In this document: positions 29,871 through 59,754 of the stretch, in pieces
How positions within the stretch are numbered: the stretch's first letter is position 1
How the letters are laid out: every line of letters begins with the position of its first letter
Assembly (NCBI RefSeq): GCF_032444005.1
Contig: NC_091291.1
Span: 120,900,001 to 120,964,000 of the forward strand
Direction of reading: 5' to 3'
DNA: 64,000 bases
DNA from: Ranitomeya imitator
Lineage: Eukaryota
The notes under the pieces: generated by a model
Seen by the model: the letters and a program-made list of their open reading frames with translations, nothing else
What the model was told of the DNA's origin: nothing
Databases searched by the model: none
Program-made: the position numbers and the translations under genes

Positions 29871-30070
29871 TAGCCGGATGTTGGTCCCAGCAGACCGACG
29901 GGGGACACATTACTGAGTATGGAGGAGCAGTTCGGTCCAGAAGGTGAACAGCAATTTACTTTATAGTCTTTTTCTCCTCCCTGAGCCCATTAGTAAGGAG
30001 TTTACTGCAGTGAACAACCCCTTTAAGTACAATAGCATCACACCGACAGGTTAGAATAGATACAATCGAG

Positions 30071-30158
<88 letters not shown>
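30071..30158. repeat. (TA)n(CA)n microsatellite
   Basis: Direct reading. Confidence 0.98.
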
Positions 30159-30160
<2 letters not shown>

Positions 30161-30239
30161 AACTACAAATGTATGGGCCCCAGTGCGAACTTTCAAATGG
30201 GCCCCCTCTGCCAAAATATTTTCAACCCAAATCCACATC

Positions 30240-30602
30240 CTGCCCATGATTCTGCCCCATCTGTCTCCACATTCTGCCCCATCTGACTCCACATTCTGCC
30301 CCATCTGTCTCCACATTCTGCCCCACCTGTCTCCACATTCTGCTCCACCTGACTCCACATTCTGCCCCATCTGTCTCCACATTCTGCCCCACCTGTCTCC
30401 ACATTCTGCCCCATCTGACTCCACATTCTGCCCCATCTGACTCCACATTCTGCCCCATCTGTCTCCACATTCTGCCCCACCTGTCTCCACATTCTGCCCC
30501 ATCTGACTCCACATTCTGCCCCATCTGTCTCCACATTCTGCCCCACCTGTCTCCACATTCTGCCCCATCTGACTCCACATTCTGCCCCATCTGTCTCCAC
30601 AT
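30240..30602. repeat. 22-bp minisatellite (ccacattctgccccatctgtct)
   Basis: Tandem copies. The 22-aa period in the track ORFs equals three units. Confidence 0.93.
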
Positions 30603-31465
30603 CTCACCGGAACAGCAGGAACCGGAAATCTGCTGCTGGCTGATACCAGAGAACACGAGCTGCACACAACCAGGACTGGGCTGCTGCTGAGAGCTGAAGG
30701 ACCCATGGTGACGTCATCGTCATGTGATCAGGAGGAGGAGCTGATAAATGGTGAAGGACCTATGATAATGATGACGTCACCACAAGTTCTTCAGCTCTTC
30801 CTTTCTAACAGTTCAGGTGTCGGCTGCTGGGTTGATGTGTGCGCTCGGCAGGTCAGGTGGAGGGCAGGTCTGTCTTTTGCAGTGCGGGAGGAATCACCTG
30901 CGCGGCAACAGTTTTGAACTTTTTGCTGATGTCGGCGTGCATCTGACCTCCCGGGCCCCTGACTCCACCGGGCCCGGTCGCAGTGGCGACTGCTGCGACC
31001 GTGGTAGTTACGCCCCTGTATATATACACAGACACACTTATGTGTCGTGTGCTGTAAATTCACAGCAGGAGCCAACAGGAGAAGAGATGGATTACATGCA
31101 GTATATTCACATAGAATATGTAGATATATAGATGTGTGTGACAAATACAATTAGTACAGTGTGTGTGCAGCTTACTGTACATGTATTTAATTAATAAAAG
31201 ATTATTTTTTGGAAAAAAATGGCGTGGGCTCCCTCTCAATTTTCATAACCAGCAGAGGGAAAGCTGATGGCTGGGGGTCGATGGTTATAGCCAGGGAAGG
31301 AGGTAATACCCATGCAGCTTCCCAGGCTGTTAATATCAGCTCACAGCTGTATATTTAGTCTTTACTGGCTATTAAAATGGGGGACCTGCCCAAAAAAATG
31401 ACAAAGGGTCCCCCTATAGTTAATAACCAGCAAAGGCTATGCAGACAGCTGCAGGCTGATATTAA

Positions 31466-33476: not shown

Positions 33477-36400
33477 ATGGAGCAAATTGTTGTCCAGGAT
33501 CTTGAGTTTTTGTATGAAGAAATCAGTTCTACTGTGAGGATCGAAAGTGCACCCGATGTGGTACAGTATGCCGTTTTCATGTCCGGTCTTACCCTTTCCC
33601 ATGGTGCACATTTATAACTCCGTGTCCTCCACATAGGAGCTCCGCTTGTGTCATAATGTACAGCCGGCACTGGAAATTACCCCAAGGGGGTAGAAATAGT
33701 GACATTTACGTGGTCACTGTTGTTTTAGAAAACTTTCCACAAATGACTATGCTCAATAAAATAGAAGACACTTTCTCCTTCGCCTCATTGGGGGACACAG
33801 ACCATGGGTGTATGCTGCTGCCACCAGGAGGCTGACACTAAGTAATACAAAGAAAAAGTTAGCTCCTCCCCTGCAGTATACACCCTCCTGCTGGCTCCCA
33901 GCTCCTCCCCTGCAGTATACACCCTCCTGCTGGCTCCCAGCTCCTCCCCTGCAGTATACACCCCCCTGCTGGCTCTCAGCTCCTCCCCTGCAGTATACAC
34001 CCTCCTGCTGGCTCCCAGCTCCTCCCCTGCAGTATACACCCTCCTGCTGGCTCCCAGCTCCTCCCCTGCAGTATACACCTCCTGCTGGCTCTCAGCTCCT
34101 CCCCTGCAGTATACACCTCCTGCTGGCTCTCAGCTCCTCCCCTGCAGTATACACCTCCTGCTGGCTCTCAGCTCCTCCCCTGCAGTATACACCCTCCTGC
34201 TGGCTCTCAGCTCCTCCCCTGCAGTATACACCTCCTGCTGGCTCTCAGCTGCTCCCCTGCAGTATACACCTCCTGCTGGCTCTCAGCTCCTCCCCTGCAG
34301 TATACAGCCTCCTGCTGGCTCTCAGCTCCTCCCCTGCAGTATATACCCTCCTGCTGGCTCTCAGCTCCTCCCCTGCAGTATACACCCTCCTGCTGGCTCT
34401 CGGCTCCTCCCCTGCAGTATACACCTCCTGCTGGCTCTCAGCTCCTCCCCTGCAGTATACACCCTCCTGCTGGCTCTCAGCTCCTCCCCTGCAGTATACA
34501 CCCTCCTGCTGGCTCTCAGCTCCTCCCCTGCAGTATACACCCTCCTGCTGGCTCTCAGCTCCTCCCCTGCAGTATACACCCTCCTGCTGGCTCTCAGCTC
34601 CTCCCCTGCAGTATACACCCTCCTGCTGGCTCTCAGCTCCTCCCCTGCAGTATACACCTCCTGCTGGCTCTCAGCTCCTCCCCTGCAGTATACACCCTCC
34701 TGCTGGCTCTCAGCTCCTCCCCTGCAGTATACACCCTCCTGCTGGCTCTCAGCTCCTCCCCTGCAGTATACACCTCCTGCTGGCTCTCAGCTCCTCCCCT
34801 GCAGTATACACCCTCCTGCTGGCTCTCAGCTCCTCCCCTGCAGTATACACCCTCCTGCTGGCTCTCAGCTCCTCCCCTGCAGTATACACCCTCCTGCTGG
34901 CTCTCAGCTCCTCCCCTGCAGTATACACCTCCTGCTGGCTCTCAGCTCCTCCCCTGCAGTATACACCCTCCTGCTGGCTCTCAGCTCCTCCCCTGCAGTA
35001 TACACCCTCCTGCTGGCTCTCAGCTCCTCCCCTGCAGTATATACCCTCCTGCTGGCTCTCAGCTCCTCCCCTGCAGTATACACCCTCCTGCTGGCTCTCG
35101 GCTCCTCCCCTGCAGTATACACCTCCTGCTGGCTCTCAGCTCCTCCCCTGCAGTATACACCCTCCTGCTGGCTCTCAGCTCCTCCCCTGCAGTATACACC
35201 CTCCTGCTGGCTCTCAGCTCCTCCCCTGCAGTATACACCCTCCTGCTGGCTCTCAGCTCCTCCCCTGCAGTATACACCCTCCTGCTGGCTCTCAGCTCCT
35301 CCCCTGCAGTATACACCCTCCTGCTGGCTCTCAGCTCCTCCCCTGCAGTATACACCTCCTGCTGGCTCTCAGCTCCTCCCCTGCAGTATACACCCTCCTG
35401 CTGGCTCTCAGCTCCTCCCCTGCAGTATACACCCTCCTGCTGGCTCTCAGCTCCTCCCCTGCAGTATACACCTCCTGCTGGCTCTTAGCTCCTCCCCTGC
35501 AGTATACACCTCCTGCTGGCTCTCAGCTCCTCCCCTGCAGTATACACCTCCTGCTGGCTCTCAGCTCCTCCCCTGCAGTATACACCTCCTGCTGGCTCTC
35601 AGCTCCTCCCCTGCAGTATACACCTCCTGCTGGCTCTCAGCTCCTCCCCTGCAGTATACACCTCCTGCTGGCCCCCAGCTAACCAGTTCTTGCTTAGTGT
35701 CCGTAGGAGGCACACGGACGGGTCTGCTATTCAGACCCAAAGAACTCTTTTTTACCGTTTTTTACTTTTTACTACGGTCGAATGGGGCGACGGATTCTTT
35801 CATGTTCCGATCTCCTCGAACCATCAACAGGCGAACACGGGAGTTTCACCTCTCCGTATCCTCTCCTGCGACGTGGGAAGCCACTGCCTGAGCTGATTTT
35901 AGGGGCGACGGGCCCCTTCATGGGCACCGATCTCCCCCTCCCTTATCAGACGAGCACTGGAGTTTCACCTTCAGTATCCTCTTCTGCAGCCAGGCCTATT
36001 GCCGGACATTCAGCCCTGTCCACCAGGTTTTACCCTCGGCTGTACAGAGGCACCTTCCAGCGTGGCGTCCGAGCAGCCCCCACTGCATCACCACTGAAAA
36101 AGCGGATGATGGAAGGAGGCAGACGGTTCCTCTCCACCCCTCTTCTGCAGGGATGGTGGATGGAGGCTCCCCAACCCTGCACCGTCCTATCTACCCGGGC
36201 ACAGCTCCTACCTGCAGCATCTGCCACCCCCTCCATATTGGGGTAAGTGCTCCGTGAGATTTGGGTTTTCCGGCGGTCAGAGGAGGGCTCCATAGCGACT
36301 GGGTCCCCACAGAGCTTCGCGGCACTTTTCCCCTCAGTCTGCGGGTGCGCGCCGGCCGAAGCCATAAATTTAGTCCCCGGCTTCGGCCCTGTTTAGGCTG

Positions 36401-39400
36401 CATCCCGGGAAGCCCCGCCCACCGCTTGCTCCCTTCTAGCGGCTCCGCCCCCCTATTCAGGCGCTTCTCGTTCCAGACGAGATCTCGGCGGCCATCTTCT
36501 TCCTCCTCCATTGCGGTCACTATTTCTTCTGGAGGGGGCTGCGGCCGGCGGTTTTTCAGCGCTGAAGTCAGCGCTATTCCAGACGGGGGACTCAGAACCT
36601 GAGTAAGATGAATCGCCCCAATATCCCCCCCTCCCCCCGGCACGCATCCCGGCAGCATTAAGGGACTAGCTTTCCCTGTTTTTTATATACTTAAGGCTGC
36701 AATCTCTGGTGCTCCTGCAACTACAGAATGTATAGTACAGTGTGCAGGCTTGCAAACAGAGAGCTGTGAGTTCCCAGCAATGAAGCTCTGGTGACTCGTT
36801 CCCTGGTGACTCGTTCCCTGGTGACTCGTTCCCTGGTGACTCGTTCCCTGGTGACTGGTTCCCTGGTGACTGGTTCCCTGGTGACTCGTTCCCTGGTGAC
36901 TGGTTCCCTGGTGACTGGTTCCCTGGTGACTGGTTCCCTGGTGACTCGTTCCCTGGTGACTCGTTCCCTGGTGACTCGTTCCCTGGTGACTGGTTCCCTG
37001 GTGACTGGTTCCCTGGTGACTGGTTCCCTGGTGACTGGTTCCCTGGTGACTGGTTCCCTGGTGACTGGTTCCCTGGTGACTCGTTCCCTGGTGACTCGTT
37101 CCCTGGTGACTGGTTCCCTGGTGACTGGTTCCCTGGTGACTCGTTCCCTGGTGACTCGTTCCCTGGTGACTCGTTCCCTGGTGACTCGTTCCCTGGTGAC
37201 TGGTTCCCTGGTGACTCATTCCCTGGTATTTAATACTCTGCCCGGTAGTCGCTGGGCCCATAGGTGCATCCCCAGCTCTCCATGCCTTTTTATTAAACCC
37301 AGGACCAGCATTCCCTGGTCTTAAGGGTCCCCTAGTTTTAAAAGGGTCACATCCCCAGCATTCTCTGCTCTGCCAGAAGCCGGTCTCCTTTTCCTTAGTA
37401 CTAAATCAGGCCAGTATGCCCTGGTCTTAAAGGCACAGGGCCAGTAGGCACTGGTCTTAAAGGCACATGGCAAGTATGCCCTCGTCTTAAAGGCACATGA
37501 CCAGCATCCCTGGTCTTAAAGGAGCATGACCAGCATTCTTGTTCTTAAAGGCACATTACCAGCTTTGCTGGTCTTTAAGGCACTTGTTCCAACATTCCTT
37601 TCATGACCAGTATTCCTGGTCTTAAAGGCACGTGACCAGCATGCCCTGGTCTTATAGACTCGTGACCAGTATCCCCTGGTCTTAAAGACACGTGTCCAGT
37701 ATACCCTGGTCTTAAAGGCACATGACCAGTATGCCCTTGTCTTAAAGGCACGTGACCAGTATTTCCTGGTCTTAAAGGCACATGACCAGTATGCCCTGGT
37801 CTTAAAGGCACGTGACCAGTATCCCCTGGTCTTAAACGCTATAACCAGTAGGCCCTGGTCTTAAAGGCACATGACCATTATGCCCTGGACTTAAAGGCTC
37901 AGGACCAGTACGCCCTGGTCTTAAACGCAAATGACCAGCATACCCTGGTTTTAAGGGCACATGACCATTATCTCCTGGATTTCAGCATGCCCTGCTTTTA
38001 AAGGCACATGAACAGTATGTCATCTTACAAAAGGCACAAGACCAGTATTCCCTGGTCTTAAAGGCTCAGGGCCAGTAACCCCTAGCCTTAACGGCGCATG
38101 ACCAGTATTTAGTGGTCTTAAGGGCACATCATCTATCCTAAGCTGGTCACCCTAACTGAGCTCTGGAGCACTCACATGCTCCCTCTCCTACAATGGGAGC
38201 CTTCGGCTAGCAGGGGCCCAAGTATTCTAGAAAAACGTACAGGTTCTAGAAAATCTCCATCAAGATTTGACGGTGATGCACTGGAAGACCTCTAAGTAGG
38301 ATACCATACCTGGTCGGAATTTTATGGGCGACGGGTCCCTTAAAGGGCTCCGATTTCCCCCCACACCTTCAAGAGACGAGCACACGGAGTGTCGCCTCCA
38401 TGTATCTTCTTCTGCATCCAGGTCTATCGCCACAACCTGCCCTGTCCACTCGGAAACCTCAATTCTGGGGATGTGGCGTCCACATTTGTGGCGTCCCAAC
38501 AAGGAGGTTTCCCCCCCTTTGTATCAGATGCAAGAAAGTGGACGATTCCTCTCCACTTCCCTGTTAAGAAGATGGTGGATCGAGGTTTTTCCTTATTTTC
38601 TTCTCTGCACGACGATGGCAGAGACCTGCTGGTTACAGTCCCGCATTCTGTCACTTGGCAGACTCGCCGGGCAGAATTTCTTGCGGTATTCCTACCAGTA
38701 TCCTGGCCGGTGTATCATCAATTAAGATTCCACAGACAGTCGGATAGCAAATCTAGTTCGTTCCGTCTTGTGGTTTCGGGTTCAGCGCTCTACCCTTCCT
38801 TAGCCGCATGGGTTGCTTGACCAAAGGGAGAGAATGAAAGTCTCCGGGTCCCAGACCTTATCTACTTCGTTCCACAGTATAGCTGGCCAATCAGATCTTC
38901 TGAGCGGGAGACTAGCAAGGGATCGTATCTCTTCTTCAGGCTCAACCAGCAGTGGAAGCATTGGCCAGGACAGTCTAGATCTAAGGGATCTTGGTTCCAA
39001 AATGGAGGGAATGAAAAGTATCTCCATTCCTGGACCCCAAACTTCTAACAACCTTTAACAGGGCCCTTTCATTTTTCGGATGGAGTTCCTCCGCTCAGCC
39101 ACTACTTCAACAGAGAAACGTGGTTGTTTTCTGGCATCCATCGTCATTCGGGATTCTTACCCTCACATACCTATTTCTCCTCTCTACTATAATCTCTTCG
39201 CCTTTCCATTCGCGAACAGTATTTTCACGACCTGGCCCTTCTGCCTGGCTACGACACCAGAGTGGTCGCAAGGGTCATGACGGTTGTCATGTTCTTCTTG
39301 CACCTTAGAAGCATGGTCGTCCTTCCTCTATTTGGTCGACTTTGTAGCCGCTCTCCTAGGACTACGCTGAGTCGTCCATATCACTTGCAATTACCTCTCT

Positions 39401-42400: not shown

Positions 42401-45400
42401 TTATCTGTAGGCATCACTGGTCACCACAACGCTTCACTGTAGGTGTTAATGAGCCACCACCATGCTTCACTGTAGGCAGGATATTCTTTTCAATGTATGC
42501 TTCATCCTTCCTCCTCCAGACATACCGCTTATCCGTAGGCCCAAGAAGTTCCAGTTTTGTTTCTGTTCTCTATAAAGGCACGGATGATTGACCTCGTGGA
42601 GACCAAAACATCTAACACCGCGGAGACACCATCACGTGTTTCTCAACGCAGTGATCCAGAACACTGCCCCCAAATATGCAAATGCAAGTAGACGAGCTGC
42701 GGAGACACCATCACATGTTTCTCAACGCAGGCAGTGAATAGCCAGGCCTTTCCCCGGGAAGGAACAACCAAGGGAAGGGCAGCATCCAATAAAGGAAAAA
42801 ATCCAATAAAGGAAAACCACCTATGCCAAGCATGGTATCCATCCACAGACAGCTGTTTCGGGGTTTTTGCCCCTCATCAGTGTGGAGTAGGAAACTGGCT
42901 ATCAGGAGCAGTGCCTAGTAGAAAGTCTATAAAGGCACTGATGATTGACCTCGTGGAGACCAAAACATCCAACACCGCGGAGACACCATCACGTGTTTCT
43001 CAACGCAGTGATCCAGAACACTGCCCCCAAATATGCAAATGCAAGTAGAGGAGCTGCGGAGACACCATCACATGTTTCTCAACTCAGGCAGTGAATAGCC
43101 AGGCCTTTCCCCGGGAAGGAACAACCAAGGGAAGGACAGCATCCAATAAAGGAAAACATCCAATAAAGGAAAACCACCTATGCCAAGCATGGTATCCATC
43201 CACAGACAGCTGTTTCGGGGTTTTTGCCCCTCATCAGTGTGGAGTAGGAAACTGGCTATCAGGAGCAGTGCCTAGTAGAAAGGCTATAAAGGCACGGATG
43301 ATTGACCTTGGCCTGGCTATTCACTTATAGACTTTCTACTAGGCACTGCTCCTGATAGCCAGTTTCCTACTCCACACTGATGAGGGACAAAAACCCCGAA
43401 ACAGCTGTCTGTGGATGGATACCATGCTTGGCATAGGTGGTTTTCCTTTATTGGATGTTTTCCTTTATTGGATGCTGCCCTTCCCTTGGTTGTTCCTTCC
43501 CGGGGAAAGGCCTGGCTATTCACTGCCTGCGTTGAGAAACATGTGATGGTGTCTCCGCAGCTCCTCTACTTGTTTCTGTTCTCTACAGAACAGAATCTCA
43601 GAACCTCTTTACATTATTTATATGGGTTTGAGCATATTGGAGACGTCTTTTCTTATTCTTTTGGGTCAGTAGAGGCGAAGTCTTGGAGTTCGGTCGTGGA
43701 GACATTCAGTCTGCGTCTGCGGCCACTACATCTTTCTGCAAGTTTTTTTTTTTTTTGCAGACATTCAAGGATTGTAATGAGCGGTTGACACCATGAAACG
43801 CCCAATGGTATTGGAGCAGTTGACACCATTTGGTCCCACTATTGCTCATTGTTTCCTTCCTTCACAGGCCAGAGCGTGTACTCCGATCCATGTTTTCTCA
43901 TCGTGTGCACTGTACGCCCCTATACGTTTTGTTTCCAGTACATTATGTTTTGTTTTACATTTTTGCACCAAAAAGTATCTGTGTATGCAATGTTTATATC
44001 ATAAGTCTTTTTATCTATATTACTTTGCATATTTCCCCTCTTTTTATCTATATTACTTTGCATATTTCCCCTTTAGGTGTTGATGCCCTCACCCGAAATC
44101 TGCCAGTTGAAAACTTTGGATTCCTTGGAGGCTGCCATGCAGGCCATTAATGAGTTTGAGGAAAGCACCATCTCAAATTATACTGTTGTAGAGAAAAAAA
44201 AAGATTTTGGAAATGAAGGTAATCTTAACTGTTGGTTTTCATGAACATTAATTCTAAAGGGTTATTTTAGCCTTTTAGACTGATTTTAGGTCCCACCGAT
44301 CACCAGAACTGGGGACTAGTGTGCTCCATTCTCTATTGGCCTCCATACTGCATAGATTGGCCGGTCGCACATGCATGGAAGAAGCTTTTTACTCCTCTAT
44401 AGTACTGAAAATAACCTGATATAGCCCAGCACTGCACAGCACTCTGCTATATTTGTGAGTGCCATTGAATTAAATATTGCCTCAGGTCGCATATGCGACC
44501 TGACACTCATTGCATCTCCTCCTTGTCACGTTCTTGCTTGCCCCCGCTCAAGTAGTCATCTGGGGTCCAATACCAATCTCAGAGGATAGGGTATAACTTA
44601 TTTAGGTTATAATTCCCATTGCTGTTTTTGTGAAACCTGTGATGTCCATGATGATTTTATATAATGACTTTTTCATAGAGAAAATGATCCTTTGTTTTGG
44701 GAAGTCGGGAGAGATGGTTATTGGCCGGACCACCATTCTGACAACACCTATCTAATGTGTATGGCCGGCTTGTGTCTATATGATCCCTCCACCTACAGAG
44801 ATCAATAGATTGCCAGTCGTTCTTTATTCCATGAGCTCTCTTATTTAAAGGGGTTTCCAGTTTCAGGGGAAAAAAAGTCCCCGGTTGCAGTTTAAAAAAA
44901 AAAAAAAAAACCTCCTCGGGTCCACTGCTGAGTCTCCACCACTTATCCTGGTGTCTCTTACTGTCTGCAGCGCTGACGTTACAGCAACAGCGCTGCAAAC
45001 AATCACTGTGGTCAGCAGCTCTGCCAAATTGAAAGCATGAGCCGCTTAGCTTACTGATTGGCTGCAGCGCTGTCCAAGTGACATTAATGCTACAGACAAC
45101 GGAAAAAAGCAGCGGAGACTCAGCGCTGGACCCAGAGACGGTGAATAAAGCAAAGTAGTAAATGATTTTGTGGTAATTTTTTTTTTTTCTACTTTGATAT
45201 TTTTAAAGCATTCAAGCCGACGTCGAAGCTTACCTTGCACTGGGAAGGACCGTTCATTAATAACGTTTCGCTGAATGAGTACTCAGGAGTTCCCTTCATG
45301 ATTGTTGGAAGAAAGGTTTTAGGTTGCCATCTTGGTAGGGACAAGGCACTAGCCCAGAAAAGGAAATATGCCGAGTCTATAAGTCAGAGAGAGGTAAAAC

Positions 45401-48400
45401 CTTTTGATTCTAGATAATTTATTGAACGATTTAGACTATGTGTATTATTAATGGTGTGTACGTCTTTACATAGTTGCTCCATACATACCGTATAGTAAAA
45501 TAAAGCACCTACAGGAATGGTAGTGACCGAAAATACTAATTTGGAGCACTGATGACAGTGACATAGTATTCTGCTTATGAAAACAATCTCCTGCAGCAGC
45601 CTATCCCCAAAGTTAGTGAGCCCCAGGTGCTGAGCTCACCCATCACTGCCATCAACTGTACTCCAAATGACTACATTCTGATTATTAATGTAGCTGAAAG
45701 CAAATAGTTTGGGGGAAAGCCAGGGTTTGGAAGTCACTTATGTGCAGTTTATTTCCATGAAAGAATTCATATCCTTTAATATAGTGATTTGCACACAAAT
45801 ATATAAATATAAATATGAACGTTTAGTTACTCTTCAACATTGAAAAGTCATTTTCTCCTTCGCCTCATTGGGGGCCACAGCCCGTGGTGTTTGCTGCTGA
45901 CACTAAGTGATACAAAGAAAGTTCTCTCCTCCCCTGCAGTATACACCTCCTGCCGGCTCTCAGCTCCTCCCCCGCAGTATACACCTCCTGCTGGTTCTCA
46001 GCTCCTCCCCTGCAGTATACACCCTCCTGCTGGCTCTCGGCTCCTCCCCTGCAGTATACACCCTCCTGCTGGCTCTCAGCTCCTCTCCTGCAGTATACAC
46101 CTCCTGCTGGCTCTCAGCTCCTCCCCTGCAGTGTACACCCTCCTGCTGGCTCTCAGCTCCTCCCCTGCAGTATACACCTCCTGCTGGCTCTCAGCTCCTC
46201 CCCTGCAGTGTACACCCTCCTGCTGGCTCTCAGCTCCTCCCCTGCAGTATACACCTCCTGCTGGCTCTCAGCTCCTCCCCTGCAGTGTACACCCTCCTGC
46301 TGGCTCTCAGCTCCTCTCCTGCAGTATACACCTCCTGCTGGCTCTCAGCTCCTCCCCTGCAGTGTACACCCTCCTGCTGGCTCTCAGCTCCTCCCCTGCA
46401 GTATACACCTCCTGCTGGCTCTCCGCTCCTCCCCTGCAGTATACACCCTCCTGCTGGCTCTCAGCTCCTCCCCTGCAGTGTACACCTCCTGCTGGCTCTC
46501 CGCTCCTCCCCTGCAGTATACACCTCCTGCTGGCTCTCAGCTCCTCCCCTGCAGTATACACCTCCTGCTGGCTCTCAGCTCCTCCCCTGCAGTATACACC
46601 TCCTGCTGGCTCTCAGCTCCTCTCCTGCAGTATACACCTCCTGCTGGCTCTCAGCTCCTCCCCTGCAGTGTACACCTCCTGCTGGCTCTCCGCTCCTCCC
46701 CTGCAGTATACACCTCCTGCTGGCTCTCAGCTCCTCTCCTGCAGTATACACCTCCTGCTGGCTCTCAGCTCCTCTCCTGCAGTATACACCTCCTGCTGGC
46801 TCTCAGCTCCTCCCCTGCAGTGTACACCTCCTGCTGGCTCTCCGCTCCTCCCCTGCAGTATACACCTCCTGCTGGCTCTCAGCTCCTCTCCTGCAGTATA
46901 CACCTCCTGCTGGCTCTCAGCTCCTCTCCTGCAGTATACACCTCCTGCTGGCTCTCCGCTCCTCCCCTGCAGTATACACCTCCTGCTGGCTCTCAGCTCC
47001 TCCCCTGCAGTATACACCCTCCTGCTGGCTCTCAGCTCCTCCCCTGCAGTATACACCCTCCTGCTGGCTCTCAGCTCCTCCCCTGCAGTATACACCTCCT
47101 GCTGGCTCTCAGCTCCTCCCCTGCAGTATACACCCTCCTGCTGGCTCTCAGCTCCTCCCCTGCAGTATACACCCTCCTGCTGGCTCTCAGCTCCTCCCCT
47201 GCAGTATACACCCTCCTGCTGGCTCTCAGCTCCTCCCCTGCAGTATTCACCCTCCTGCTGGCTCTCAGCTCCTCCTCTGCAGTATACACCTCCTGCTGGC
47301 TCTCAGCTCCTCCCCTGCAGTGTACACCTCCTGCTGGCTCTCAGCTCCTCCCCTGCAGTATACACCTCCTGCTGGCTCTCAGCTCCTCCCCTGCAGTATA
47401 CACCCTCCTGCTGGCTCTCAGCTCCTCCCCTGCAGTATACACCCTCCTGCTGGCTCTCAGCTCCTCCCCTGCAGTGTACACCCTCCTGCTGGCTCTCAAC
47501 TCCTCCCCTGCAGTATACAGCCTCCTGCTGGCTCTCAGCTCCTCCCCTGCAGTATACACCCTCCTGCTGGCTCTCAGCTCCTCCCCTGCAGTATACACCT
47601 CCTGCTTCCTCTCAGCGCCTCCCCTGCAGTATACACCTCCTGCTGGCTCTCAGCTCCTCCCCTGCAGTATACACCTCCTGCTGGCTCTCAGCTCCTCCCC
47701 TGCAGTATACACCCTCCTGCTTCCTCTCAGCTCCTCCCCTGCAGTATACACCTCCTGCTGGCTCTCAGCTCCTCTCCTGCAGTATACACCTCCTGCTGCT
47801 CTCAGCTCCTCCCCTGCAGTATACACCTCCTGCTGGCTCTCAGCTCCTCCCCTGCAGTATACACCCTCCTGCTGGCTCTCAGCTCCTCCCCTGCAGTATA
47901 CACCTCCTGCTGGCTCTCGGCTCCTCCCCTGCAGTATACACTTTCCTGCTGGCTCTCGGCTCCTCCCCTGCAGTATACACCTCCTGCTGGCTCTCGGCTC
48001 CTCCTTTGCAGTATACACCTCCTGCTGGCTCTCGGCTCCTCCTTTGCAGTATACACCTCCTGCTGGCTCTCGGCTCCTCCCCTGCAGTATACACCCTCCT
48101 GCTGGCTCTCAGCTCCTCCCCTGCAGTATACACCCTCCTGCTGGCTCTCGGCTCCTCCTTTGCAGTATACACCTCCTGCTGGCTCTCGGCTCCTCCCCTG
48201 CAGTATACACCTCCTGCTGGCTCTCGGCTCCTCCCCTGCAGTATACACCCTCCTGCTGGCTCTCAGCTCCTCCCCTGCAGTATACACCCTCCTGCTGGCT
48301 CTCGGCTCCTCCCCTGCAGTATTCACCCTCCTGCTGGCTCTCGGCTCCTCCCCTGCAGTATACACCCTCCTGCTGGCTCTCGGCTCCTCCCCTGCAGTGT

Positions 48401-51400
48401 ACACCCCCCTGCTGGCTCTCAGCTCCTCCCCTGCAGTATACACCCTCCTGCTGGCTCTCAGCTCCTCCCCTGCAGTATACACCCTCCTGCCGGCTCTCAG
48501 CTCCTCCCCTGCAGTATACACCTCCTGCTGGCTCTCGGCTCCTCCCCTGCAGTATACACCCTCCTGCTGGCTCTCAGCTCCTCCCCTGCAGTATACACCT
48601 CCTGCTGGCTCTCGGCTCCTCCCCTGCAGTATACACCTCCTGCTGTCTCTCGGCTCCTCCCCTGCAGTATACACCTCCTGCTGGCTCTCGGCTCCTCCCC
48701 TGCAGTATACACCTCCTGCTGGCTCTCAGCTCCTCCCCTGCAGTATACACCTCCTGCTGGCTCTCAGCTCCTCCCCTGCAGTATATACCTCCTGCTGGCT
48801 CTCGGCTCCTCCCCTGCAGTATACACCCTCCTGCTGGCTCTCAGCTCCTCCCCTGCAGTATACACCCTCCTGCTGGCTCTCGGCTCCTCCCCTGCAGTAT
48901 TCACCCTCCTGCTGGCTCTCGGCTCCTCCCCTGCAGTATACACCCTCCTGCTGGCTCTCGGCTCCTCCCCTGCAGTATTCACCCTCCTGCTGGCTCTCGG
49001 CTCCTCCCCTGCAGTATACACCCTCCTGCTGGCTCTCAGCTCCTCCCCTGCAGTATACACCTCCTGCTGGCTCTCAGCTCCTCCCCTGCAGTATACACCT
49101 CCTGCTGGCTCTCAGCTCCTCCCCTGCAGTATACACCCTCCTGCTGGCTCTCAGCTCCTCCCCTGCAGTATACACCCTCCTGCCGGCTCTCAGCTCCCCT
49201 GCAGTATACACCTCCTGCTGGCTCTCGGCTAACCAGTTCTTGCTTAGTGCCTGTAGGAGGCACATGGGTCTGTTTCAGACCCCAACGTTTTTATTTTACT
49301 TTTCTGTAAATTTGTATTTTGTAATTAACGGAGTGAAGGGGGTGACGGATCCTTTCAAGGTTCCGATCTTCCCCGAACCATCAACAGGCGAGCACGGCGA
49401 GTATACCTCCCCGTACCCTCTCCTGTGACGTGGGAAGCCATGCCTGAGCTCACTTCAGGGGCGACGGTTCCTTTCATGGTCCCGATCTCCCCACACCAGC
49501 AGCAGGCTACCACATGGAGTGTCACCTCCATGTATCCTCTCCTGGAGCCAGGCCTAATGCCGGACAACTGGCCCTGTTCACCTGGCGACTGAACTCCGTG
49601 GATGTACAGAGGCCCCTCTCTATGGCGTCCGAGCAGCCCCCACTGTCCCACCACTGTGAAAGCGGATGGCACAAGGAGGCGGACGGGTCCTCTCCACCTC
49701 CCTAACAAACGGATGGTGGATTGAGGTTTATCCCTGCACCGTCCACACTGCAATACCCGACCTGCAGTCATCCGCGGCGGCTCCATGCCGGGACGCGCAC
49801 CGATGGTGAGTGGATCCAGTCAGCGGTGGGCCTCTGCAGCGGGATATTCACATGCTGACAGGCAGCCTCAGCTTCCCTGTGGCCCACCTCCCTGAGGTAA
49901 CGCTCCAGCCGGCTGCAAAAATTTAGCCCCCGGCTTCGGCCGATGTGTAGGCCGCAACCCAGAAGCGCACTATGGCGCCCTAAGATGGTTCCGCCCGCTT
50001 TTCTTGCGCTTCTCGCCTGGCACGGAAGCGCTCAATTTTCTCGGCCACAACGCCCCTCACTTCTACCGCTGGTATCGCTCCCGCAGGTGCAGGAATTTAG
50101 GCCCCGGCTTGGGCCTGTTCATGGAAGTCTCGAGGCTCCACCCCCCCGAATTGGCGCTTCTCGCCCTCTGCAAGATTTTATCACCTCTGCAACTCCCAGT
50201 GGCCATCTTGGTCCACCCGGCCGGCTCACACAGGGGCGACGACTTTGTATTAACCCCTTTCTGACCTCGGACGGGATAGTACATCCGAGGTCAGAAGCCC
50301 CGCTTTGATGTGGGCTCCGGCGGTGAGCCCGCATCAAAGCCGGGACATGTCAGCTGTTTTGAACAGCTGACATGTGCCCGTAATAGGCGCAGGCAGAATC
50401 GCGATCCACCCGCCGCTATTAACTAGTTAAATGCCGCTGTCAAACGCAGACAGCGGCATTTAACTACCGCTTCCGGCCGGGCGGCCGGAAATGATCGTAT
50501 CGCCGACCCCCGTCACATGATCGGAGGTCGGCGATGCTTGTACATTGTAACCATAGAGGTCCTTGAGACCTCTATGGTTACTGATCACCGGCAGCTGTGA
50601 GCACCACCCTGTGGTCGGCGCTCACAGCACACCTGCAATTCTGCTACATAGCAGCGAACATCAGATCGCTTCTATGTAGCAGAGGCGATCGAGTTGTGCC
50701 TGCTTCTAGCCTCCTATGGAGGCTATTGAAGCATGACAAAAGTAAAAAAAAATAATAAAAAAAAATGTGAAAAAAATAAAATATAAAAGTTTAAATCACC
50801 CCCCTTTCGCCCCAGTCAAAATAAGTCAATAAAAAAAATCAATCTTACAAATATTTGGTATCGCCGCGTTCAGAATCGCCCGATCTATCAATAAAAAAAA
50901 AGCATTAACCTGATCGCTAAACGGCGTAGCGAGAAAAAAATTCGAAACGCCAGAATTCCTTTTTTTTGGTCGCTGCGACATTGCATTAAAATGCAATAAT
51001 GGGCGATCAAAAGAACGTATCTGCACTGAAGTGGTATAATTAAAAACTCCAGCTCGGAACGCAAAAAATAAGCCCTCAACCGACCCAGATCATGAAAAAT
51101 GGAGACGCTACGAGTATCGGAAAATGGCGCAATTTTTTTTTTTTTTTTAGCAAAGTTTGGAATTTTTTTTCACCACTTAGATAAAAAATAACCTAGACAT
51201 GTTTGGTGTCTATGAACTCGTACTGACCTGGAGAATCACAATGGCAGCTCAGTTTTAGCAGTTAGTGAACCTAGCAAAAAAGCCAAACAAAAAACAAGTG
51301 TGGGATTGCACTTTTTTTTGCAATTTCACTGCACTTGGAATTTTTTTCCCGTTTTCTAGTACATGACATGGTAAAACCAATGGTGTTGTTCAAAAGTACA

Positions 51401-54400: not shown

Positions 54401-57400
54401 AGTAGGGACTTTCTCGCAGGGAGTCTTCACACATAGTTCTTCTCTATCACATACCGTTAGATCATTGGGACCTTAATGGTCCTAGGAGTCTTACTGTAGA
54501 CTCCTTTTTGATCCGGACAAACTTTACTATCAGGGAAGGTCCCCCTTTTTTCCTCTGCAATATCCTCATCCTGACGAGTCTTCAGAGCTAGCTGCTCAGT
54601 TCTTTCAGACCTTTTTCCCTTATTTCCTTCAAGGCAAGGTTGTCCTCAGGCCATCCCCGTCCCTTGTTACCAAGGTGGTATTGTATGACCACTCTTATGA
54701 GGGCATAGTTCTTCCCTCATCTCTTTCTGCACCAGTCCACAAGATGGAATGAGTTCCCCATATTCCGGTCAAAGTGAGTGCTCTGAGTAGGTACGTCTCA
54801 AGGACAGCGTCCTTCCGAAGGTTGGACACTTTAACTTGGACTTCCTGACATTTACAGGAAGTGTTAGCCGTTTCACGGCCATGTTAGCCTGGTGGATTCC
54901 TTTCACCATCCTGGAGTCCTTCCGTGTTAGATGTCAGGCTATCTCCCTGTCTCTCGTGGGTTCTAGGCACCAGGCGTCGACAAGGCACACCTGCAAGCTT
55001 GCAGATTCGTCCAGTCCGCATGCATTCTTGAAGCACTATAATTCCCACACTTTCACAGATGGGAGTCTGGGCAGGCGGACTCTGCAGGCCGTGGTTGCGC
55101 ACTTGTAAGTAGCGGTTACACAGGGCCTGATCTGATGTTGTCCCCACCCAGGGACTGCTTTGGGACGTCCCACGGTCTGTGTCCCCCAATGAGGCGAATG
55201 AGAAATAGGGATTTTTGTGTACTCACCGTAAAATCCTTTTCTCCGAGCCATTCATTGGGGGACACAGCTCCCACCCTGGTATTAGCTTATGCTTGTTTTA
55301 TAATTGGATATGCTATACTCTCATATATAATATGACATGCTGTAAGCTCAATCTGATATGCTATACTCTCATATATAATATGACATGCTGTGAGCTCATA
55401 TGTTGTTATTGATCTACTGCTTTTGCACCAAACTGGTTAGCTGAGAGCCAGCAGGAGGGTGTATACTGCAGAGGAGGAGCGAACTTTCTTAGTATCACTT
55501 AGTGTCAGCATCCTAGTGGCAGCAGCATACACCCACGGTCCTGTGTCCACCAATGAATGGCTCGGAGAAAAGGATTTTATGGTGAGTACACAAAAATCCC
55601 TATTCATTACATTCAAACTTTTCTGATTTTCTTTTTTTTCTTCAAATATTTATTAATCTCTGCATGAAAACCTGTTGATCACATGGAGACACTCAGCCGA
55701 CTCTTCTCCCCATGCTCGGCTCAGTTTTCTGAATATTTTTTTTTTTAATAAGAGAACAAATCTAGATTCTGTGCTTCGGCCGATGTAAAACTGTTAGTCA
55801 TTTTCCTTTAAACACCATAAATAAATGTCTTTTCAAGATAATTGATGAATAAAATAACGATTTCATTTTTCTTTTCTCACTCAGATTGAATTAATGCGAA
55901 ATGCACAGAATAACTGTCCAGCCAAAATCTATGTGTATCATATATTGAAATTTCCAGACTTTCAGGTATATTAATCTGCCGGACAGCACTGGTGTAATTT
56001 GTACTTCCATTTTTGCTTGATGCTACTAAATGGGAGCCAGTAATAGTAGGATCCTAGCCCTCAGACCCTCTGCAATTTGCAAGGTATCCCGTGCATGATG
56101 ATCGTGCAGTTGTTTTTGCTTTCATCCTTTGTGTGTGAGCATTGTGCTCTGATCTTCAGTCAGAGCATCAATACACACTAGTGACCCGGTGCCATTGGAA
56201 GCCATGAAAATGCCACACCTGGAATCCGCTCCAGACCTTTTACCTACTCAATTGATTATAGATTAACAAGGGACTAGCCCAGGCAGCCCACTAAAAAGCT
56301 TTTGAGATACCGTAATTGTCCAATTACTTTTGGTCCCTTTTAAAAAGAGGCAGCTACATATTAAAGAGCTGTAGTTCCTAAACCCTTACTCCAATTACAA
56401 TGCTAATATCCCCCCAAAAAACCTTAGTGTCTGCATTTTAAGCCCTTATTGATTACTTAAATGTATCTTGAATATGTTTTGGTAAACGGGTGAAATACAA
56501 AAACTTTTGTCACAGTCCAGATATTTCTAGACCTAAGGCCCTGGCCTGGTCCGCTTGCCATAGGATGTTAATATTGTATAACTTTTTAATGATTAGCTAA
56601 TCATTCTTAATAAGGGATTATTCTTTTTGTAATTTTTGATATTATGTTTTTTGTTGTTGTTGTGGTTCTTTGGTACAGCTTTTTTGCATTGATTTATGAT
56701 CCCAAACCCTACAATGCTCTTTTATATTAGGCATTTTCTTCTCAAATCGGTGTTCAAAAGTTTTATTTTTTAATTCAATATGGAGGTAATTTAAATTTGT
56801 ATTATTTTTTTTTTAATTATCATTATTTTTATTAATAATTCTTCCTATATAATCTATGTATTTTTATGTTTTAGATTGCAAAGAAGACAAGAAGGCAAAT
56901 GAAAGAGGCATCAAGAAAAATCAGAGATTCATTAGAGCAAAATTCCAAGTTGAACCACAGTTACATAATTCTTTTTCCACAGTTATCGCCCCATGAGAAC
57001 CATCCTGTAGATGAGGAGGTAAGTTATGTTTTCCAAATTATTTGTAGCAGAACGTGTAATGAACTCCGTGTGCAATCTTTAACCTGATCCCTGTCGTCTT
57101 TAATCACCCCAATCATCTACTTATGATCCCGGTCCTGAGTTATGGTTATTATTCACATTCATATATAACTCATCCCACAGTAATAATGCTGGGTTCCCGG
57201 TGCGGCAAGAAATGGTCCTTTTTTCCTTTTTAACCGTGATTAAAAAAAAAAAAAAAAACAGTACTTATTGTGCTCAAGCATGAAAGGTTGATACTCCTCC
57301 ATTAAGTGTTCCTCTGCCTGTGACCACGTGCATTTTGTCTCCTTGTTCATCCAGACAGCATCACCTCATCACGAGGAAAGATCCTAAACCAGTAGTGCAA

Positions 57401-58594
57401 TAATATATAAGGCCAACAGGAGTGTATTTACCCATTTTAATTTCAGGCCCCAGATGAAGCCAGTTTAGGCGAAACTCTTGTTGGGCAGATGAAGACTTTT
57501 TTTTTTTTTTTCCTTCAATTTATTGATGTAATAAAAGTTAATGGTTTCAGCCCTCTCTGCTTAAATATTTTGTTATTTTCATGGTGGCTTTTTTAATCAT
57601 TATTTGACTTCTTATGCCTACAACTCCGGTCATGCTTATTAAAGAAATTGCACATGAAAGGATATTTTTCAGCGCCAATATCTTAAGCTTCTAACCTGTC
57701 TTATGAGGGTTGTCCAGGTGTTGAGCCAAACTGTCTGCTATTGATTACCTATATCCCTGAAAACCCTTTTTAATTATTTCCACCTACAATGATATTAGGC
57801 TTAATTTTACTTTTCAAGATGTAATTGTTGCCGGCTGAAATATTCAGTTGCTGTTGCTTGCTGCTGCAGTTATGTTCCATTATTCCTCATTTTCCTTTTA
57901 TTTTGTCATAAACCAGTGTGATAATCAACATCTTCTCACCACGAAGATCATTTATCAATATTAAAGGGAATCTACCACCAGGTTTTTGCTACTCTATCTG
58001 AGAGCCGCATGATGTAGAGACAGAGAGCCTGATTCCGGCAATGTGTCACTTACTCGACTGCTTGCTGCAATTTTGCTTAAAATTTTTTTCTCTGATACAG
58101 ATCTAGTGGTTCTCTGAATGCTGAGCCCTGTATAACTGTGCATAGGCAGAAAGCTGTCAATAAGTGATGGAGGGTGTGGCTGGACTGCCTGGCAAGTAAA
58201 GTAGTCCACTAGTGATAATCTCCTGCTGATAAAAGTTTGATTTTATTAAAAAAAAAAAAAAAAAGTACAACATGCGGCCTAGTAAGTGATACATTGCTGT
58301 AATCAGGGTCTCGGCCCCTACATCATGCTTGATGATAGATTCCGTGTAAGTCTGTATGTTTTTTACATTCTCCATTCCTACTTGCATGACTTCTGTATAC
58401 AATGTTAATATACTCTTTATTTTCTCTTTTCCTATGTATATTTCTCTTTTAGGAGATGATGCTCTCTCATGAATCCTACCAGCCAGAAATGTTCCATTCC
58501 TTAGAGAACGCTTTGCAGGCCATTAGTGAGTTTGAAGAAAGTACAACTTCCAATTATATAGTTCTAGAAAAGCAGAAAGACTTTGGGGATGAAG
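33477..58594 (+). CDS. Unnamed multi-exon gene with tandem CARF/ALS2CR8-like modules (3' part beyond window)
   Basis: Coding exons 33477-33560 (tentative first), 44077-44218, 45209-45393, 55885-55965, 56875-57018 and 58453-58594, all GT-AG and in phase. Peptides EYSGVPFMIVGRKVLGCHLG, NCPAKIYVYHILKFPDF and HENHP resemble recalled CARF motifs (YDGIPFV..., ECQYG, TCPARIYIKKVQKFPEY). Exon 58453-58594 is a paralogue of 44077-44218, with the same length and phases. Confidence 0.8.
33861..35680. repeat. 39/38-bp satellite (~47 copies, agctcctcccctgcagtatacacc(c)tcctgctggctctc) inside the left ITR of DIRS A
   Basis: Unit equals the single-copy segment in the right ITR (reverse complement at ~41320-41370). 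Confidence 0.97.
36790..37226. repeat. 15-bp minisatellite (ggtgact[c/g]gttccct, ~29 copies) inside DIRS A
   Basis: Direct reading. Confidence 0.96.
37290..38130. repeat. Degenerate 30-bp minisatellite (ccctggtcttaaaggcacatgaccagtatg) inside DIRS A
   Basis: Same unit occurs more homogeneously in DIRS B at 51565-51825. Confidence 0.9.
42842..42886 (-). ncRNA. Minimal type I hammerhead ribozyme, copy 1
   Basis: Minus strand reads UCCACA CUGAUGA GGGG caaaaa CCCC GAAA C-AGCU-G UC/ UGUGGA. Complete catalytic core, 6-bp helix I, 4-bp helix II, palindromic helix III. Confidence 0.92.
43199..43243 (-). ncRNA. Minimal type I hammerhead ribozyme, copy 2
   Basis: Identical to copy 1, offset by 357 bp. 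Confidence 0.92.
43371..43415 (+). ncRNA. Minimal type I hammerhead ribozyme, copy 3 (inverted, one helix II mismatch)
   Basis: TCCACA CTGATGA GGGA CAAAAA CCCC GAAA CAGCTGTC TGTGGA. Predicted cleavage after C43409. Confidence 0.85.
45923..49230. repeat. 39/38-bp satellite (~86 copies) inside the left ITR of DIRS B
   Basis: Same unit as the array in DIRS A. Single copy in the right ITR at ~55437-55482. Confidence 0.97.
50254..51528 (-). mobile_element. Non-autonomous piggyBac-type element with TTAA TSD, nested in DIRS B
   Basis: TTAA at 50250-50253 and 51529-51532, CCCCTT...AAGGGG ends, reverse complement of 31466-32722. Confidence 0.88.
51565..51825. repeat. 30-bp minisatellite (ccctggtcttaaaggcacacgaccagtatt, ~8 copies) inside DIRS B
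   Basis: Direct reading. Confidence 0.93.
57447..57486 (+). ncRNA. Degenerate minimal hammerhead (Penelope-type relic)
   Basis: GCCC CAGATGA A GCC agttta GGC GAAAC tctt GTT GGGC. Core has U4 to A, so it is probably inactive. Confidence 0.5.
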
Positions 58595-59740: not shown

Positions 59741-59754
59741 AAGGCTAAGTGCAC

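What the first reader, a model, noticed from the sequence alone, without database searches (positions are those of the whole stretch)
33477..58594. Uncharacterised gene built from tandem CARF/ALS2CR8-like modules
Seen: four exons (142, 185, 81, 144 nt) encode a ~184-aa module: VLMPSPEICQLKTLDSLEAAMQAINEFEESTISNYTVVEKKKDFGNE-AFKPTSKLTLHWEG...EYSGVPFMIVGRKVLGCHLGRDK...NCPAKIYVYHILKFPDFQ-IAKK...HENHP. The next exon restarts the module (SLENALQAISEFEESTTSNYIVLEKQKDFGDE) with identical length and phases. The C...C...HxxHP pattern suggests a zinc-binding DNA-binding fold. Established: CARF has one such domain. Inference: a multi-domain transcription-factor-like paralogue made by exon-block duplication, possibly of transposon ancestry. 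The frame stayed intact despite ~20 kb of intronic insertions. The ORF track misses most of it.
Basis: partly seen in the sequence, partly recalled or inferred. Interest (0 to 1): 0.8.

Follow-up and report, generated by a model that had tools for sequence, protein, structure and literature searches.

The report
Poison-frog gene with doubled CARF-type domain
The window holds the first six coding exons of an annotated but unstudied poison-frog gene whose protein carries two tandem copies of the DNA-binding domain of the transcription factor CARF; the gene descends from a Mutator-like transposase gene that lost its enzyme part.

Summary
Exons of 84, 142, 185, 81, 144 and 142 nt, all with AG/GT borders, splice into an open frame. 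Its 259 residues are identical to residues 1-259 of RefSeq XP_069597048, an "uncharacterized protein" of 495 aa from Ranitomeya imitator.

The gene lies head to head with PPCS. It runs about 11 kb past the window end, so only module 1 and the first exon of module 2 are inside.

Each module matches Pfam ALS2CR8 positions ~5-143. Both keep a family-wide Cys, Cys, His-x2-His signature.

Exon lengths and phases match the single-module gene of Eleutherodactylus (139/185/111/144) and the Xenopus laevis gene (130/185/111/150). The Xenopus gene still carries MULE transposase and PHD domains. Eleutherodactylus keeps a decayed MULE remnant just past its stop codon.

A module tree puts the duplication in Dendrobatoidea. 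dN/dS against Eleutherodactylus is about 0.24.

ALS2CR8 is the N-terminal domain of a MULE clade found in many animal phyla. A confident AlphaFold model (pLDDT 91) has no Foldseek match in the PDB.

The most likely role is a catalytically dead, DNA-binding regulator with two binding domains. This is a new variant of a known family and is of moderate interest.

The parts
33477..33560 (+). First coding exon (ATG at 33477, 84 nt, 28 codons, ends in phase 0). An AG acceptor 10 nt upstream suggests a further 5'-UTR exon.
   Evidence: Identical to P0044 residues 1-28. The same 84-nt exon is present in E. coqui.
44077..44218 (+). Module 1, exon 1 (142 nt). Encodes the N-terminal strand-helix-strand (LKTLDSLEAAMQAINEFEESTISNYTVVEK).
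   Evidence: AF2 elements E10-14, H17-31 and E35-40.
45209..45393 (+). Module 1, exon 2 (185 nt). Holds the conserved W, the GVPF motif and the first conserved Cys (LGCHLG).
   Evidence: (PF15299 positions 10-49, 27.2 bits). The 185-nt length is identical in E. coqui and X. laevis.
55885..55965 (+). Module 1, exon 3 (81 nt). Holds the second conserved Cys (NCPAKIYVYHI). It is 30 nt shorter than in E. coqui and X. laevis (111 nt), so the basic RRxxxQxTKK loop is missing.
   Evidence: (PF15299 69-88).
56875..57018 (+). Module 1, exon 4 (144 nt). Encodes a helix and the last strand, and holds the conserved P and H-x2-H (FPQLSPHENHP). Ends in phase 0.
   Evidence: (PF15299 91-141).
58453..58594 (+). 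Module 2, exon 1 (142 nt; same length and phase as 44077-44218). The remaining exons of module 2 and the tail exon lie beyond the window end.

Best explanation
This is the 5' two-thirds of a single-copy host gene of the poison frog Ranitomeya imitator. It is RefSeq XP_069597048, 495 aa, and lies head to head with PPCS.

The protein has four parts:
- a 28-aa leader;
- ALS2CR8 (CaRF-type) module 1, about 186 aa;
- ALS2CR8 module 2, about 194 aa;
- an 87-aa helical tail that completes the ALS2CR8 domain of module 2.

Shown here:
- The gene descends from an intron-bearing anuran gene that encoded a Mutator-like (MULE) transposase-type protein, with an ALS2CR8 N-terminal domain followed by MULE/RNaseH-like and PHD domains. 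X. laevis still has that form.
- In hyloid frogs the enzyme part decayed. E. coqui keeps a remnant with an in-frame stop.
- In Dendrobatoidea the phase-0-to-phase-0 block of four exons that encodes the strand-rich, Cys/His-bearing half of the domain was duplicated in tandem. There are two copies in Ranitomeya and Dendrobates and three in Anomaloglossus.

Inferred:
- Each module is a zinc-stabilised DNA-binding unit like the CaRF DNA-binding domain, which binds DNA directly and sequence-specifically (PMC2877716).
- The protein has no transposase core and no recognisable activation domain. It would act as a non-catalytic, two-headed DNA-binding regulator, able to read a longer or bipartite site or to bridge two sites.
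- Module 1 has lost the basic loop and a near-invariant Lys, so the two heads are probably not equivalent.
For: Exons and identity to P0044.

Pfam ALS2CR8: 205 bits in two stretches for P0044 and 74.5 bits for module 1 alone.

Synteny: PPCS lies upstream on the opposite strand in R. imitator, R. variabilis and Anomaloglossus.

Module exon lengths:
- R. imitator 142/185/81/144;
- E. coqui 139/185/111/144;
- X. laevis 130/185/111/150, with the same phases.

Transposase ancestry:
- X. laevis P0202 has ALS2CR8, RNaseH-like, MULE and PHD domains.
- E. coqui has a MULE remnant with an in-frame stop and deletions at L001 47263-47490, overlapping the last codons of the annotated CDS in another frame and running 203 nt past its stop.

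Trees:
- The nine dendrobatoid modules form one clade (96/94, and 99/95 in the larger tree).
- That clade sits inside an anuran clade (99/98).
- MULE-bearing Xenopus and Dendropsophus branch below the domain-only genes.

Constraint:
- dN/dS is 0.24 against E. coqui over 210 codons.
- 16 of 17 signature residues are kept in module 1 and 17 of 17 in module 2.
- The frame is open in four species.

Conserved Cys, Cys, His, His.

The module plus tail folds as one confident domain: pLDDT 91.2, pTM 0.83.
Against: - No expression or splice-junction data could be examined. The gene model is a computational RefSeq prediction.
- DNA binding and zinc binding are inferred from CaRF and from conservation, not tested.
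- No true vertebrate CARF could be retrieved, so I could not map the experimentally defined CaRF DNA-binding segment onto the module.
- Module 2 evolves faster than module 1 among dendrobatids (82-93% against 92-97% identity).
- D. tinctorius module 2 has Ser in place of the first Cys, so not every module need be functional in every species.
- dS against E. coqui is near saturation (1.0), so the dN/dS value is rough.
- PPCS was not seen within 10 kb of the gene in E. coqui or Bufo, nor in the about 3 kb upstream of the X. laevis gene. One-to-one orthology outside Dendrobatoidea rests on the tree and exon structure only.
Confidence: 0.7

Rival explanations
1. The protein is a transposon-control factor rather than a gene-regulatory transcription factor. 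As a domain-only derivative of a MULE transposase, it would occupy the terminal repeats of related MULE elements and block or titrate their transposase. This is how truncated P-element (KP-type) repressors work.
For: It keeps only the transposase's N-terminal domain. Frogs still hold MULE-bearing relatives (Xenopus P0202, Dendropsophus P0059) and multi-copy short ALS2CR8 genes (Phyllobates, Bufo bufo). This reading shares every shown step with the best explanation and differs only in the target.
Against: No MULE-bearing copy from a dendrobatid turned up in any search. No terminal repeats or target sites were examined. The syntenic position and long-term constraint fit either role.
Confidence: 0.15
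2. It is a decaying relic. The gene would be a transcribed or merely predicted remnant of a dead transposase gene with no current function, whose open frame has survived by chance or through annotation bias.
For: The enzyme part has been lost. Module 2 diverges faster than module 1, and D. tinctorius module 2 lacks the first Cys. Module 1 lost the basic loop. No expression data were available.
Against: A 495-codon frame split over about 10 exons is open in R. imitator, R. variabilis and D. tinctorius, and a 718-codon frame is open in Anomaloglossus. All splice sites in the window are canonical. dN/dS is about 0.24. Signature residues are kept in both R. imitator modules.
Confidence: 0.1
3. It is part of a still-mobile Mutator-like element, autonomous or not, that happens to lie in this window.
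For: ALS2CR8+MULE+SWIM proteins are multi-copy in Hydra and some fishes.
Against: P0044 has no MULE or SWIM domain. The coding exons are spread over 42 kb with 10-kb introns full of other repeats. The position next to PPCS is the same in three species of two families.
Confidence: 0.02
4. It is the frog orthologue of CARF itself.
For: It shares the Pfam family, and NCBI names some relatives 'calcium-responsive transcription factor-like'.
Against: The protein ends 87 aa after the second module, with no long C-terminal activation region. It has two modules where CARF has one. Its nearest relatives outside the domain-only frog genes are MULE-bearing genes of frogs and fishes. No vertebrate CARF was similar enough to be retrieved in any search.
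Confidence: 0.02

Closest known systems
CARF / CaRF (calcium-response factor, ALS2CR8), Pfam PF15299
   Same: It has the same Pfam domain, well above threshold. CaRF's domain binds DNA directly and sequence-specifically, and it was described as unlike any known DNA-binding domain (PMC2877716). Both are non-catalytic proteins built on this domain.
   Different: CARF has one domain plus a long C-terminal activation region. This protein has two N-terminal half-domains and one tail and nothing else. It is restricted to frogs, lies next to PPCS, and groups with MULE-bearing genes. Pfenning et al. reported only one CaRF-like gene per species, and the searches here show many.
FHY3 / FAR1 of plants (domesticated MULE transposases acting as transcription factors)
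   Same: The evolutionary logic is the same: a Mutator-like transposase gene becomes an immobile host gene that uses the N-terminal DNA-binding domain. The ancestral architecture here (N-terminal domain, then MULE, then SWIM) parallels that of FHY3.
   Different: FHY3 and FAR1 keep the MULE and SWIM domains, whereas this frog gene lost them. The N-terminal domain here is ALS2CR8, not Pfam FAR1. Only one weak, non-significant FAR1 hit was seen.
FLYWCH1 and other multi-FLYWCH proteins
   Same: These are tandem arrays of a Mutator-related Cys/His DNA-binding module within one non-catalytic protein (PMC1702500, PMC10027918).
   Different: The domain family is different. No sequence or Foldseek similarity was shown here. 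The array here was made by duplicating a four-exon block and has only 2-3 units.
Metazoan ALS2CR8-MULE-SWIM proteins (e.g. Hydra LOC105844598, teleost si:dkey-31c13.1, X. laevis XELAEV_18028457mg)
   Same: These are direct relatives. They share the N-terminal domain, and in X. laevis they share intron positions and phases.
   Different: They have one module and keep the RNaseH-like MULE core, with or without SWIM, C48 peptidase or PHD domains. The Ranitomeya gene has two modules and no core.

Membership tests
Pfam ALS2CR8 (PF15299) / CaRF-type domain family | HMM score above the curated gathering threshold (28.9 bits) | tested here: met
   P0044 scores 205.4 bits, E=1.6e-60, in two stretches. 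Module 1 alone scores 74.5 bits. The window exon pieces hit profile positions 10-49, 69-88 and 91-141 in order.
Pfam ALS2CR8 (PF15299) / CaRF-type domain family | Family-wide conserved residues (W, GxP, Cys, GxD, KK-x2-Cys-P-A, P-x-F, P-x4-His-x2-His) | tested here: met
   These residues are invariant or at least 90% conserved in A1 (30 sequences) and A2 (74 sequences). R. imitator module 1 keeps 16 of 17 (K117Q) and module 2 keeps 17 of 17.
CARF orthologue | Single DNA-binding domain followed by an intermediate domain and a C-terminal activation domain, as described for CaRF in PMC2877716 | tested here: not met
   The protein has two modules and ends 87 aa after module 2. No other Pfam domain is present.
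CARF orthologue | Groups with vertebrate CARF in a tree, or shares CARF synteny | not tested
   No vertebrate CARF was retrieved by any search. The neighbours here are PPCS and a protein kinase gene.
MULE (Mutator-like) transposase | RNaseH-like DDE core (PF10551 / PF21056) | tested here: not met
   The core is absent from P0044, P0002, P0056 and P0043. It is present in relatives P0060, P0059 and P0202. It survives as a broken remnant after the E. coqui stop codon.
MULE (Mutator-like) transposase | Terminal inverted repeats, target-site duplications and multiple copies | not tested
   The 3' end of the gene lies outside the window. The single syntenic position in three species argues against mobility.
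WRKY-GCM1 zinc-finger superfamily (includes FAR1-type and MULE DNA-binding domains) | Four-stranded sheet with a Cys dyad and a His dyad that chelate zinc (PMC1702500) | tested here: inconclusive
   The order of elements is compatible: Cys at the end of a strand, Cys just before the next strand, and His-x2-His after the last strand. Foldseek against the PDB gave nothing (best E 0.085 and 0.11, TM at most 0.26). A profile search of PDB sequences gave nothing. Pfam FAR1 gave one member at E=2.4, plus one hit at E=0.029.
Tandem exon-block duplication | The duplicated unit has symmetric phases and the copies are each other's closest relatives | tested here: met
   The block is phase 0 to phase 0 and 552-579 nt long. 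The first exon of copy 2 has the same 142-nt length. The dendrobatoid modules are monophyletic at 96/94 and 99/95.

The most novel reading that the evidence does not exclude
The CaRF/ALS2CR8 domain was long described as an orphan DNA-binding domain with no relatives. On this reading it is the N-terminal DNA-binding domain of a pan-metazoan clade of Mutator-like transposases and has a fold with no solved counterpart. CARF and this frog gene would be independent domestications of it. In poison frogs the binding head was then multiplied by exon-block duplication, making a new two- or three-headed DNA-binding regulator with a longer or bipartite target site. The association of ALS2CR8 with MULE and SWIM domains is shown here. 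I found no paper that states it, although domain databases display it implicitly. The functional part, meaning two active heads and a new specificity, is untested.
Probability: 0.35. Interest if true: 0.6.

Novelty: new variant of a known kind. Interest (0 to 1): 0.45.

Why it matters
The finding gives a dated, stepwise example of how a transposase gene becomes a host DNA-binding protein. The steps are a full MULE-type gene (Xenopus), a decayed enzyme part (Eleutherodactylus), a clean domain-only gene (Bufo), and a multiplied binding head (poison frogs), all with the same intron positions.

It also ties CARF's 'orphan' DNA-binding domain to a large transposase family. That link suggests where the domain came from. 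It also supplies hundreds of natural variants for working out its structure and DNA code.

For genome annotation, it explains why 'calcium-responsive transcription factor-like' genes are numerous in many animals: most of the relatives retrieved here carry a MULE transposase core.

Tried and rejected
- Foldseek with the module-1 model (pLDDT 78) against the PDB and BFVD, and with the module-2-plus-tail model (pLDDT 91) against the PDB, gave no match with E below 0.07. A WRKY/GCM/FAR1 fold could be neither confirmed nor excluded.
- A profile search of PDB sequences gave nothing.
- A Pfam scan of all 30 modules at E up to 10 gave only ALS2CR8 consistently.
- Orthologous DNA for dN/dS among dendrobatids could not be fetched. 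The files for R. imitator, R. variabilis, D. tinctorius and Anomaloglossus were too large or the gene range too long. I used E. coqui instead.
- True vertebrate CARF could not be retrieved. The amphioxus 'CARF' query returned only MULE-type relatives.
- PPCS synteny outside Dendrobatoidea was not seen within the flanks available for B. bufo, E. coqui or X. laevis. The teleost si:dkey-31c13.1 gene has other neighbours.
- tblastn found no further module exons or MULE remnants between 58595 and 64000.
- Literature searches linking CARF or ALS2CR8 to transposases or WRKY found nothing relevant.
- I considered that the long ORFs at 33808-35682 and 45840-49428 might be coding. I rejected this because they are read-throughs of 38-39-bp minisatellites.
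Full report
**1. What is in the window**

| Exon | Coordinates | Length |
|---|---|---|
| Module 1, exon 1 | 44077-44218 | 142 nt |
| Module 1, exon 2 | 45209-45393 | 185 nt |
| Module 1, exon 3 | 55885-55965 | 81 nt |
| Module 1, exon 4 | 56875-57018 | 144 nt |
| Module 2, exon 1 | 58453-58594 | 142 nt |

Each is preceded by a pyrimidine tract and AG and followed by GT. A start exon lies at 33477-33560 (84 nt from the ATG). The six exons splice into one open frame.

The four-exon block is 552 nt, or 184 codons, and it starts and ends in phase 0. The next exon repeats the first exon of the block at 61% amino-acid identity, with the same length and phase.

The introns measure 10.5, 1.0, 10.5, 0.9 and 1.4 kb. 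They are filled with minisatellites and retroelement fragments. An intact frame across such introns is ordinary.

**2. Which gene it is**

I searched the 61 residues of exon 2 against 1.84 billion representative proteins. There were 41 hits at E up to 0.001. The best were a 698-aa protein matched in three stretches and a 495-aa protein matched in two.

Cluster look-ups name them as 'uncharacterized protein' models:
- Anomaloglossus baeobatrachus (three modules);
- Ranitomeya variabilis and R. imitator (two modules).

The 259 residues encoded in the window are identical to residues 1-259 of the R. imitator protein XP_069597048, P0044. The window is therefore from R. imitator.

In that assembly the CDS spans 41,882 bp. 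PPCS (DFP domain) lies 4.6 kb upstream on the other strand, and a protein kinase gene lies downstream. The PPCS first exon is in the window at 28174-28878, minus strand. By offset, the gene ends near window-equivalent 75,358. The window therefore holds the leader, module 1 and only the first exon of module 2, and tblastn finds nothing more up to 64000.

PPCS is also the upstream neighbour in R. variabilis and Anomaloglossus.

**3. Domain identity**

The exon pieces hit Pfam ALS2CR8 (PF15299) collinearly, at profile positions 10-49, 69-88 and 91-141. Module 1 alone scores 74.5 bits against a cut-off of 28.9. The whole protein scores 205 bits in two stretches.

A module covers the first ~143 of the 235 profile positions. 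Only the last module is followed by the 87-aa tail that completes the Pfam domain.

In an alignment of 30 modules, C120, H176, H179, P76 and P171 (module-1 numbering) are invariant and C87 is at least 90% conserved. In a 74-sequence alignment reaching cnidarians, molluscs, echinoderms and fishes, the same Cys, Cys, His and His stay at 90% or above.

Both R. imitator modules keep the 17 signature residues, with one exception: K117Q in module 1. Module 1 also lacks the 10-12-residue basic loop (consensus RRxxxQxTKK) because its third exon is 81 nt instead of 111.

**4. How the two-module gene arose**

The E. coqui relative (P0057, single module) could be mapped exactly onto its locus. Its exons are 84/139/185/111/144/372 nt.

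In X. laevis, two adjacent gene models (P0011 and P0202) are one gene. Its module exons are 130/185/111/150 nt, with the same phases.

The module has therefore been a four-exon, phase-0-to-phase-0 block since early anuran history. Duplicating such a block keeps the frame.

Maximum-likelihood trees of modules give this picture:
- All nine dendrobatoid modules form one clade (96/94, and 99/95 in the larger tree).
- That clade is sister to the single-module Bufo genes, followed by E. coqui.
- Module 1 is orthologous across Ranitomeya, Dendrobates and Anomaloglossus (91-92/96).

The duplication therefore happened in the stem of Dendrobatoidea, with a further copy in Anomaloglossus.

Independent tandem duplications exist in the frog Pseudophryne, the crayfish Cherax and the crinoid Anneissia. 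None occurs among about 80 MULE-bearing relatives.

**5. Transposase ancestry**

Relatives carry ALS2CR8 followed by a MULE/RNaseH-like core:
- Hydra P0060 has ALS2CR8 + ZSWIM1-3 RNaseH-like/MULE + SWIM.
- X. laevis P0202 has ALS2CR8 + RNaseH-like/MULE + PHD.
- Dendropsophus P0059 has ALS2CR8 + MULE.

Searching with the MULE half of the Hydra protein returned 110 proteins. They come from cnidarians, a priapulid, a brachiopod, molluscs, echinoderms, tunicates, amphioxus, teleosts, an insect, a spider and bryozoans. Most have PF15299 + PF10551 + PF21056, with or without SWIM, C48 peptidase or PHD. None has Pfam FAR1. A second search gave the same picture for fishes, amphioxus and lungfish.

In the E. 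coqui locus the start of the MULE core is still recognisable at L001 47263-47490. It overlaps the last codons of the annotated CDS in another frame and runs 203 nt past its stop. It reads HGSSITLLDATQ*TTKYALPL..., in another frame, with an in-frame stop and deletions.

In the tree, MULE-bearing Xenopus and Dendropsophus branch below the domain-only genes inside one anuran clade (99/98).

The gene is thus a domain-only descendant of a MULE-type gene. It is not itself mobile: it has no core domain, it spans 42 kb, and it has the same neighbour in three species.

**6. Constraint**

Nei-Gojobori dN/dS between R. imitator exons 1-5 and E. coqui is 0.24 (dN 0.24, dS 1.0, near saturation).

The first exons of modules 1 and 2 give 0.12 on only 47 codons.

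Among dendrobatids, identity to R. imitator is as follows:

| Region | R. variabilis | D. tinctorius |
|---|---|---|
| Module 1 | 97% | 92% |
| Module 2 | 93% | 83% |
| Tail | 97% | 93% |

D. tinctorius module 2 has Ser at the first Cys position.

The gene is under purifying selection overall. Module 2 may be less constrained in some species.

**7. Structure**

AlphaFold2 on module 1 with 30 sequences gave pLDDT 78 and pTM 0.72. On module 2 plus tail with 74 sequences it gave pLDDT 91.2 and pTM 0.83.

The predicted order of elements is strand, helix, strand, long strand, helix, strand, helix, strand, then five helices. The long strand ends at the first Cys. The second Cys sits just before the next strand. 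His-x2-His follows the last strand.

Foldseek found no solved structure that resembles either model (best E 0.085 and 0.11, TM at most 0.26). BFVD gave nothing either, and no PDB sequence matches the profile.

The placement of the four ligands is compatible with the 'insert-containing' FAR1-type version of the WRKY-GCM1 fold that Babu et al. described for MULE transposases (PMC1702500). That is a lead and not a result. Pfam FAR1 gave only non-significant hits, and I had no model coordinates to check the metal-site geometry.

**8. Likely mechanism**

CaRF binds DNA directly and sequence-specifically through this region, and it was reported to have no relatives (PMC2877716).

By homology, each module here is most likely a zinc-stabilised DNA-binding head. 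The protein has two heads, one helical tail, no enzyme core and no recognisable effector domain.

I therefore rate a non-catalytic, two-headed DNA-binding regulator as most likely. A transposon-control role is the main functional rival, and a functionless relic is a minor rival. The steps that are shown and those that are inferred are listed separately in the best explanation.

**9. Novelty**

The gene is already a RefSeq model, and its domain is a known Pfam family. Three things are new:
- the tandem-module architecture and its dating to poison frogs;
- the stepwise loss of the MULE core with intron positions conserved;
- the explicit link of the CaRF domain to a pan-metazoan MULE clade.

I found that link stated in no paper, including a 2023 survey of transposon-derived transcription factors.

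Noticed in passing
window 24052-28878 (minus strand); exon ORFs 26434-26916 and 28174-28878: This is the PPCS gene (phosphopantothenoylcysteine synthetase, DFP domain), head to head with the ALS2CR8 gene. The two CDS starts are 4.6 kb apart, so a shared bidirectional promoter region is possible.
   Followed up: partly
window 11416-15844 (+): A DIRS-like retroelement. Its gag-like ORF has a LAP2alpha-type domain (11486-12913). It also has RT and RNaseH (12447-14819) and a 947-aa ORF with no Pfam hit (13001-15844). Related fragments lie in intron 3 (about 52.2-55.3 kb).
   Followed up: partly
window 33861-35680 and 45926-49230: The same 38-39-bp GC-rich minisatellite (47 and 86 copies) sits in two different introns of the gene. 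It creates spurious ORFs of up to 1,173 aa on both strands.
   Followed up: partly
window 59750-60936 and 61359-62544: A near-perfect inverted repeat with 1.19-kb arms (99-100% complementary, 422-nt spacer) lies in the intron after module 2 exon 1. It is either a very young foldback insertion or a palindromic long-read assembly artefact.
   Followed up: partly
window 21293-22343 (+): A LINE-type reverse-transcriptase fragment (RVT_1) split over two ORFs.
   Followed up: partly
L001 35381-35491 (E. coqui); P0004 vs P0057; P0042 vs P0043: The 111-nt exon that carries the second conserved Cys is skipped in annotated isoforms of E. coqui and Anomaloglossus. Skipping is in frame and would remove a core strand and a putative zinc ligand. 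The equivalent exon in the window is 55885-55965.
   Followed up: no
L001 47263-47490 (E. coqui): A decayed MULE transposase core with an in-frame stop lies at the end of the annotated ALS2CR8 gene, overlapping its last codons in another frame and running 203 nt past the stop.
   Followed up: yes
L005 3152-16383 (X. laevis): Two adjacent gene models (XELAEV_18028458mg, 133 aa, and XELAEV_18028457mg, 961 aa) are parts of one ALS2CR8-MULE-PHD gene. Part of the 111-nt exon (9947-10000) is in neither model.
   Followed up: yes
proteins P0007, P0047-P0054 (Phyllobates terribilis) and P0009 (Bufo bufo): Several near-identical short ALS2CR8 genes lie on different chromosomes in these frogs. This hints at recent dispersal or segmental duplication of truncated family members.
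   Followed up: no
window 30038-30706: A tandem repeat of about 63 bp next to a (GT)n tract gives repetitive ORFs on the minus strand, between PPCS and the ALS2CR8 gene.
   Followed up: no
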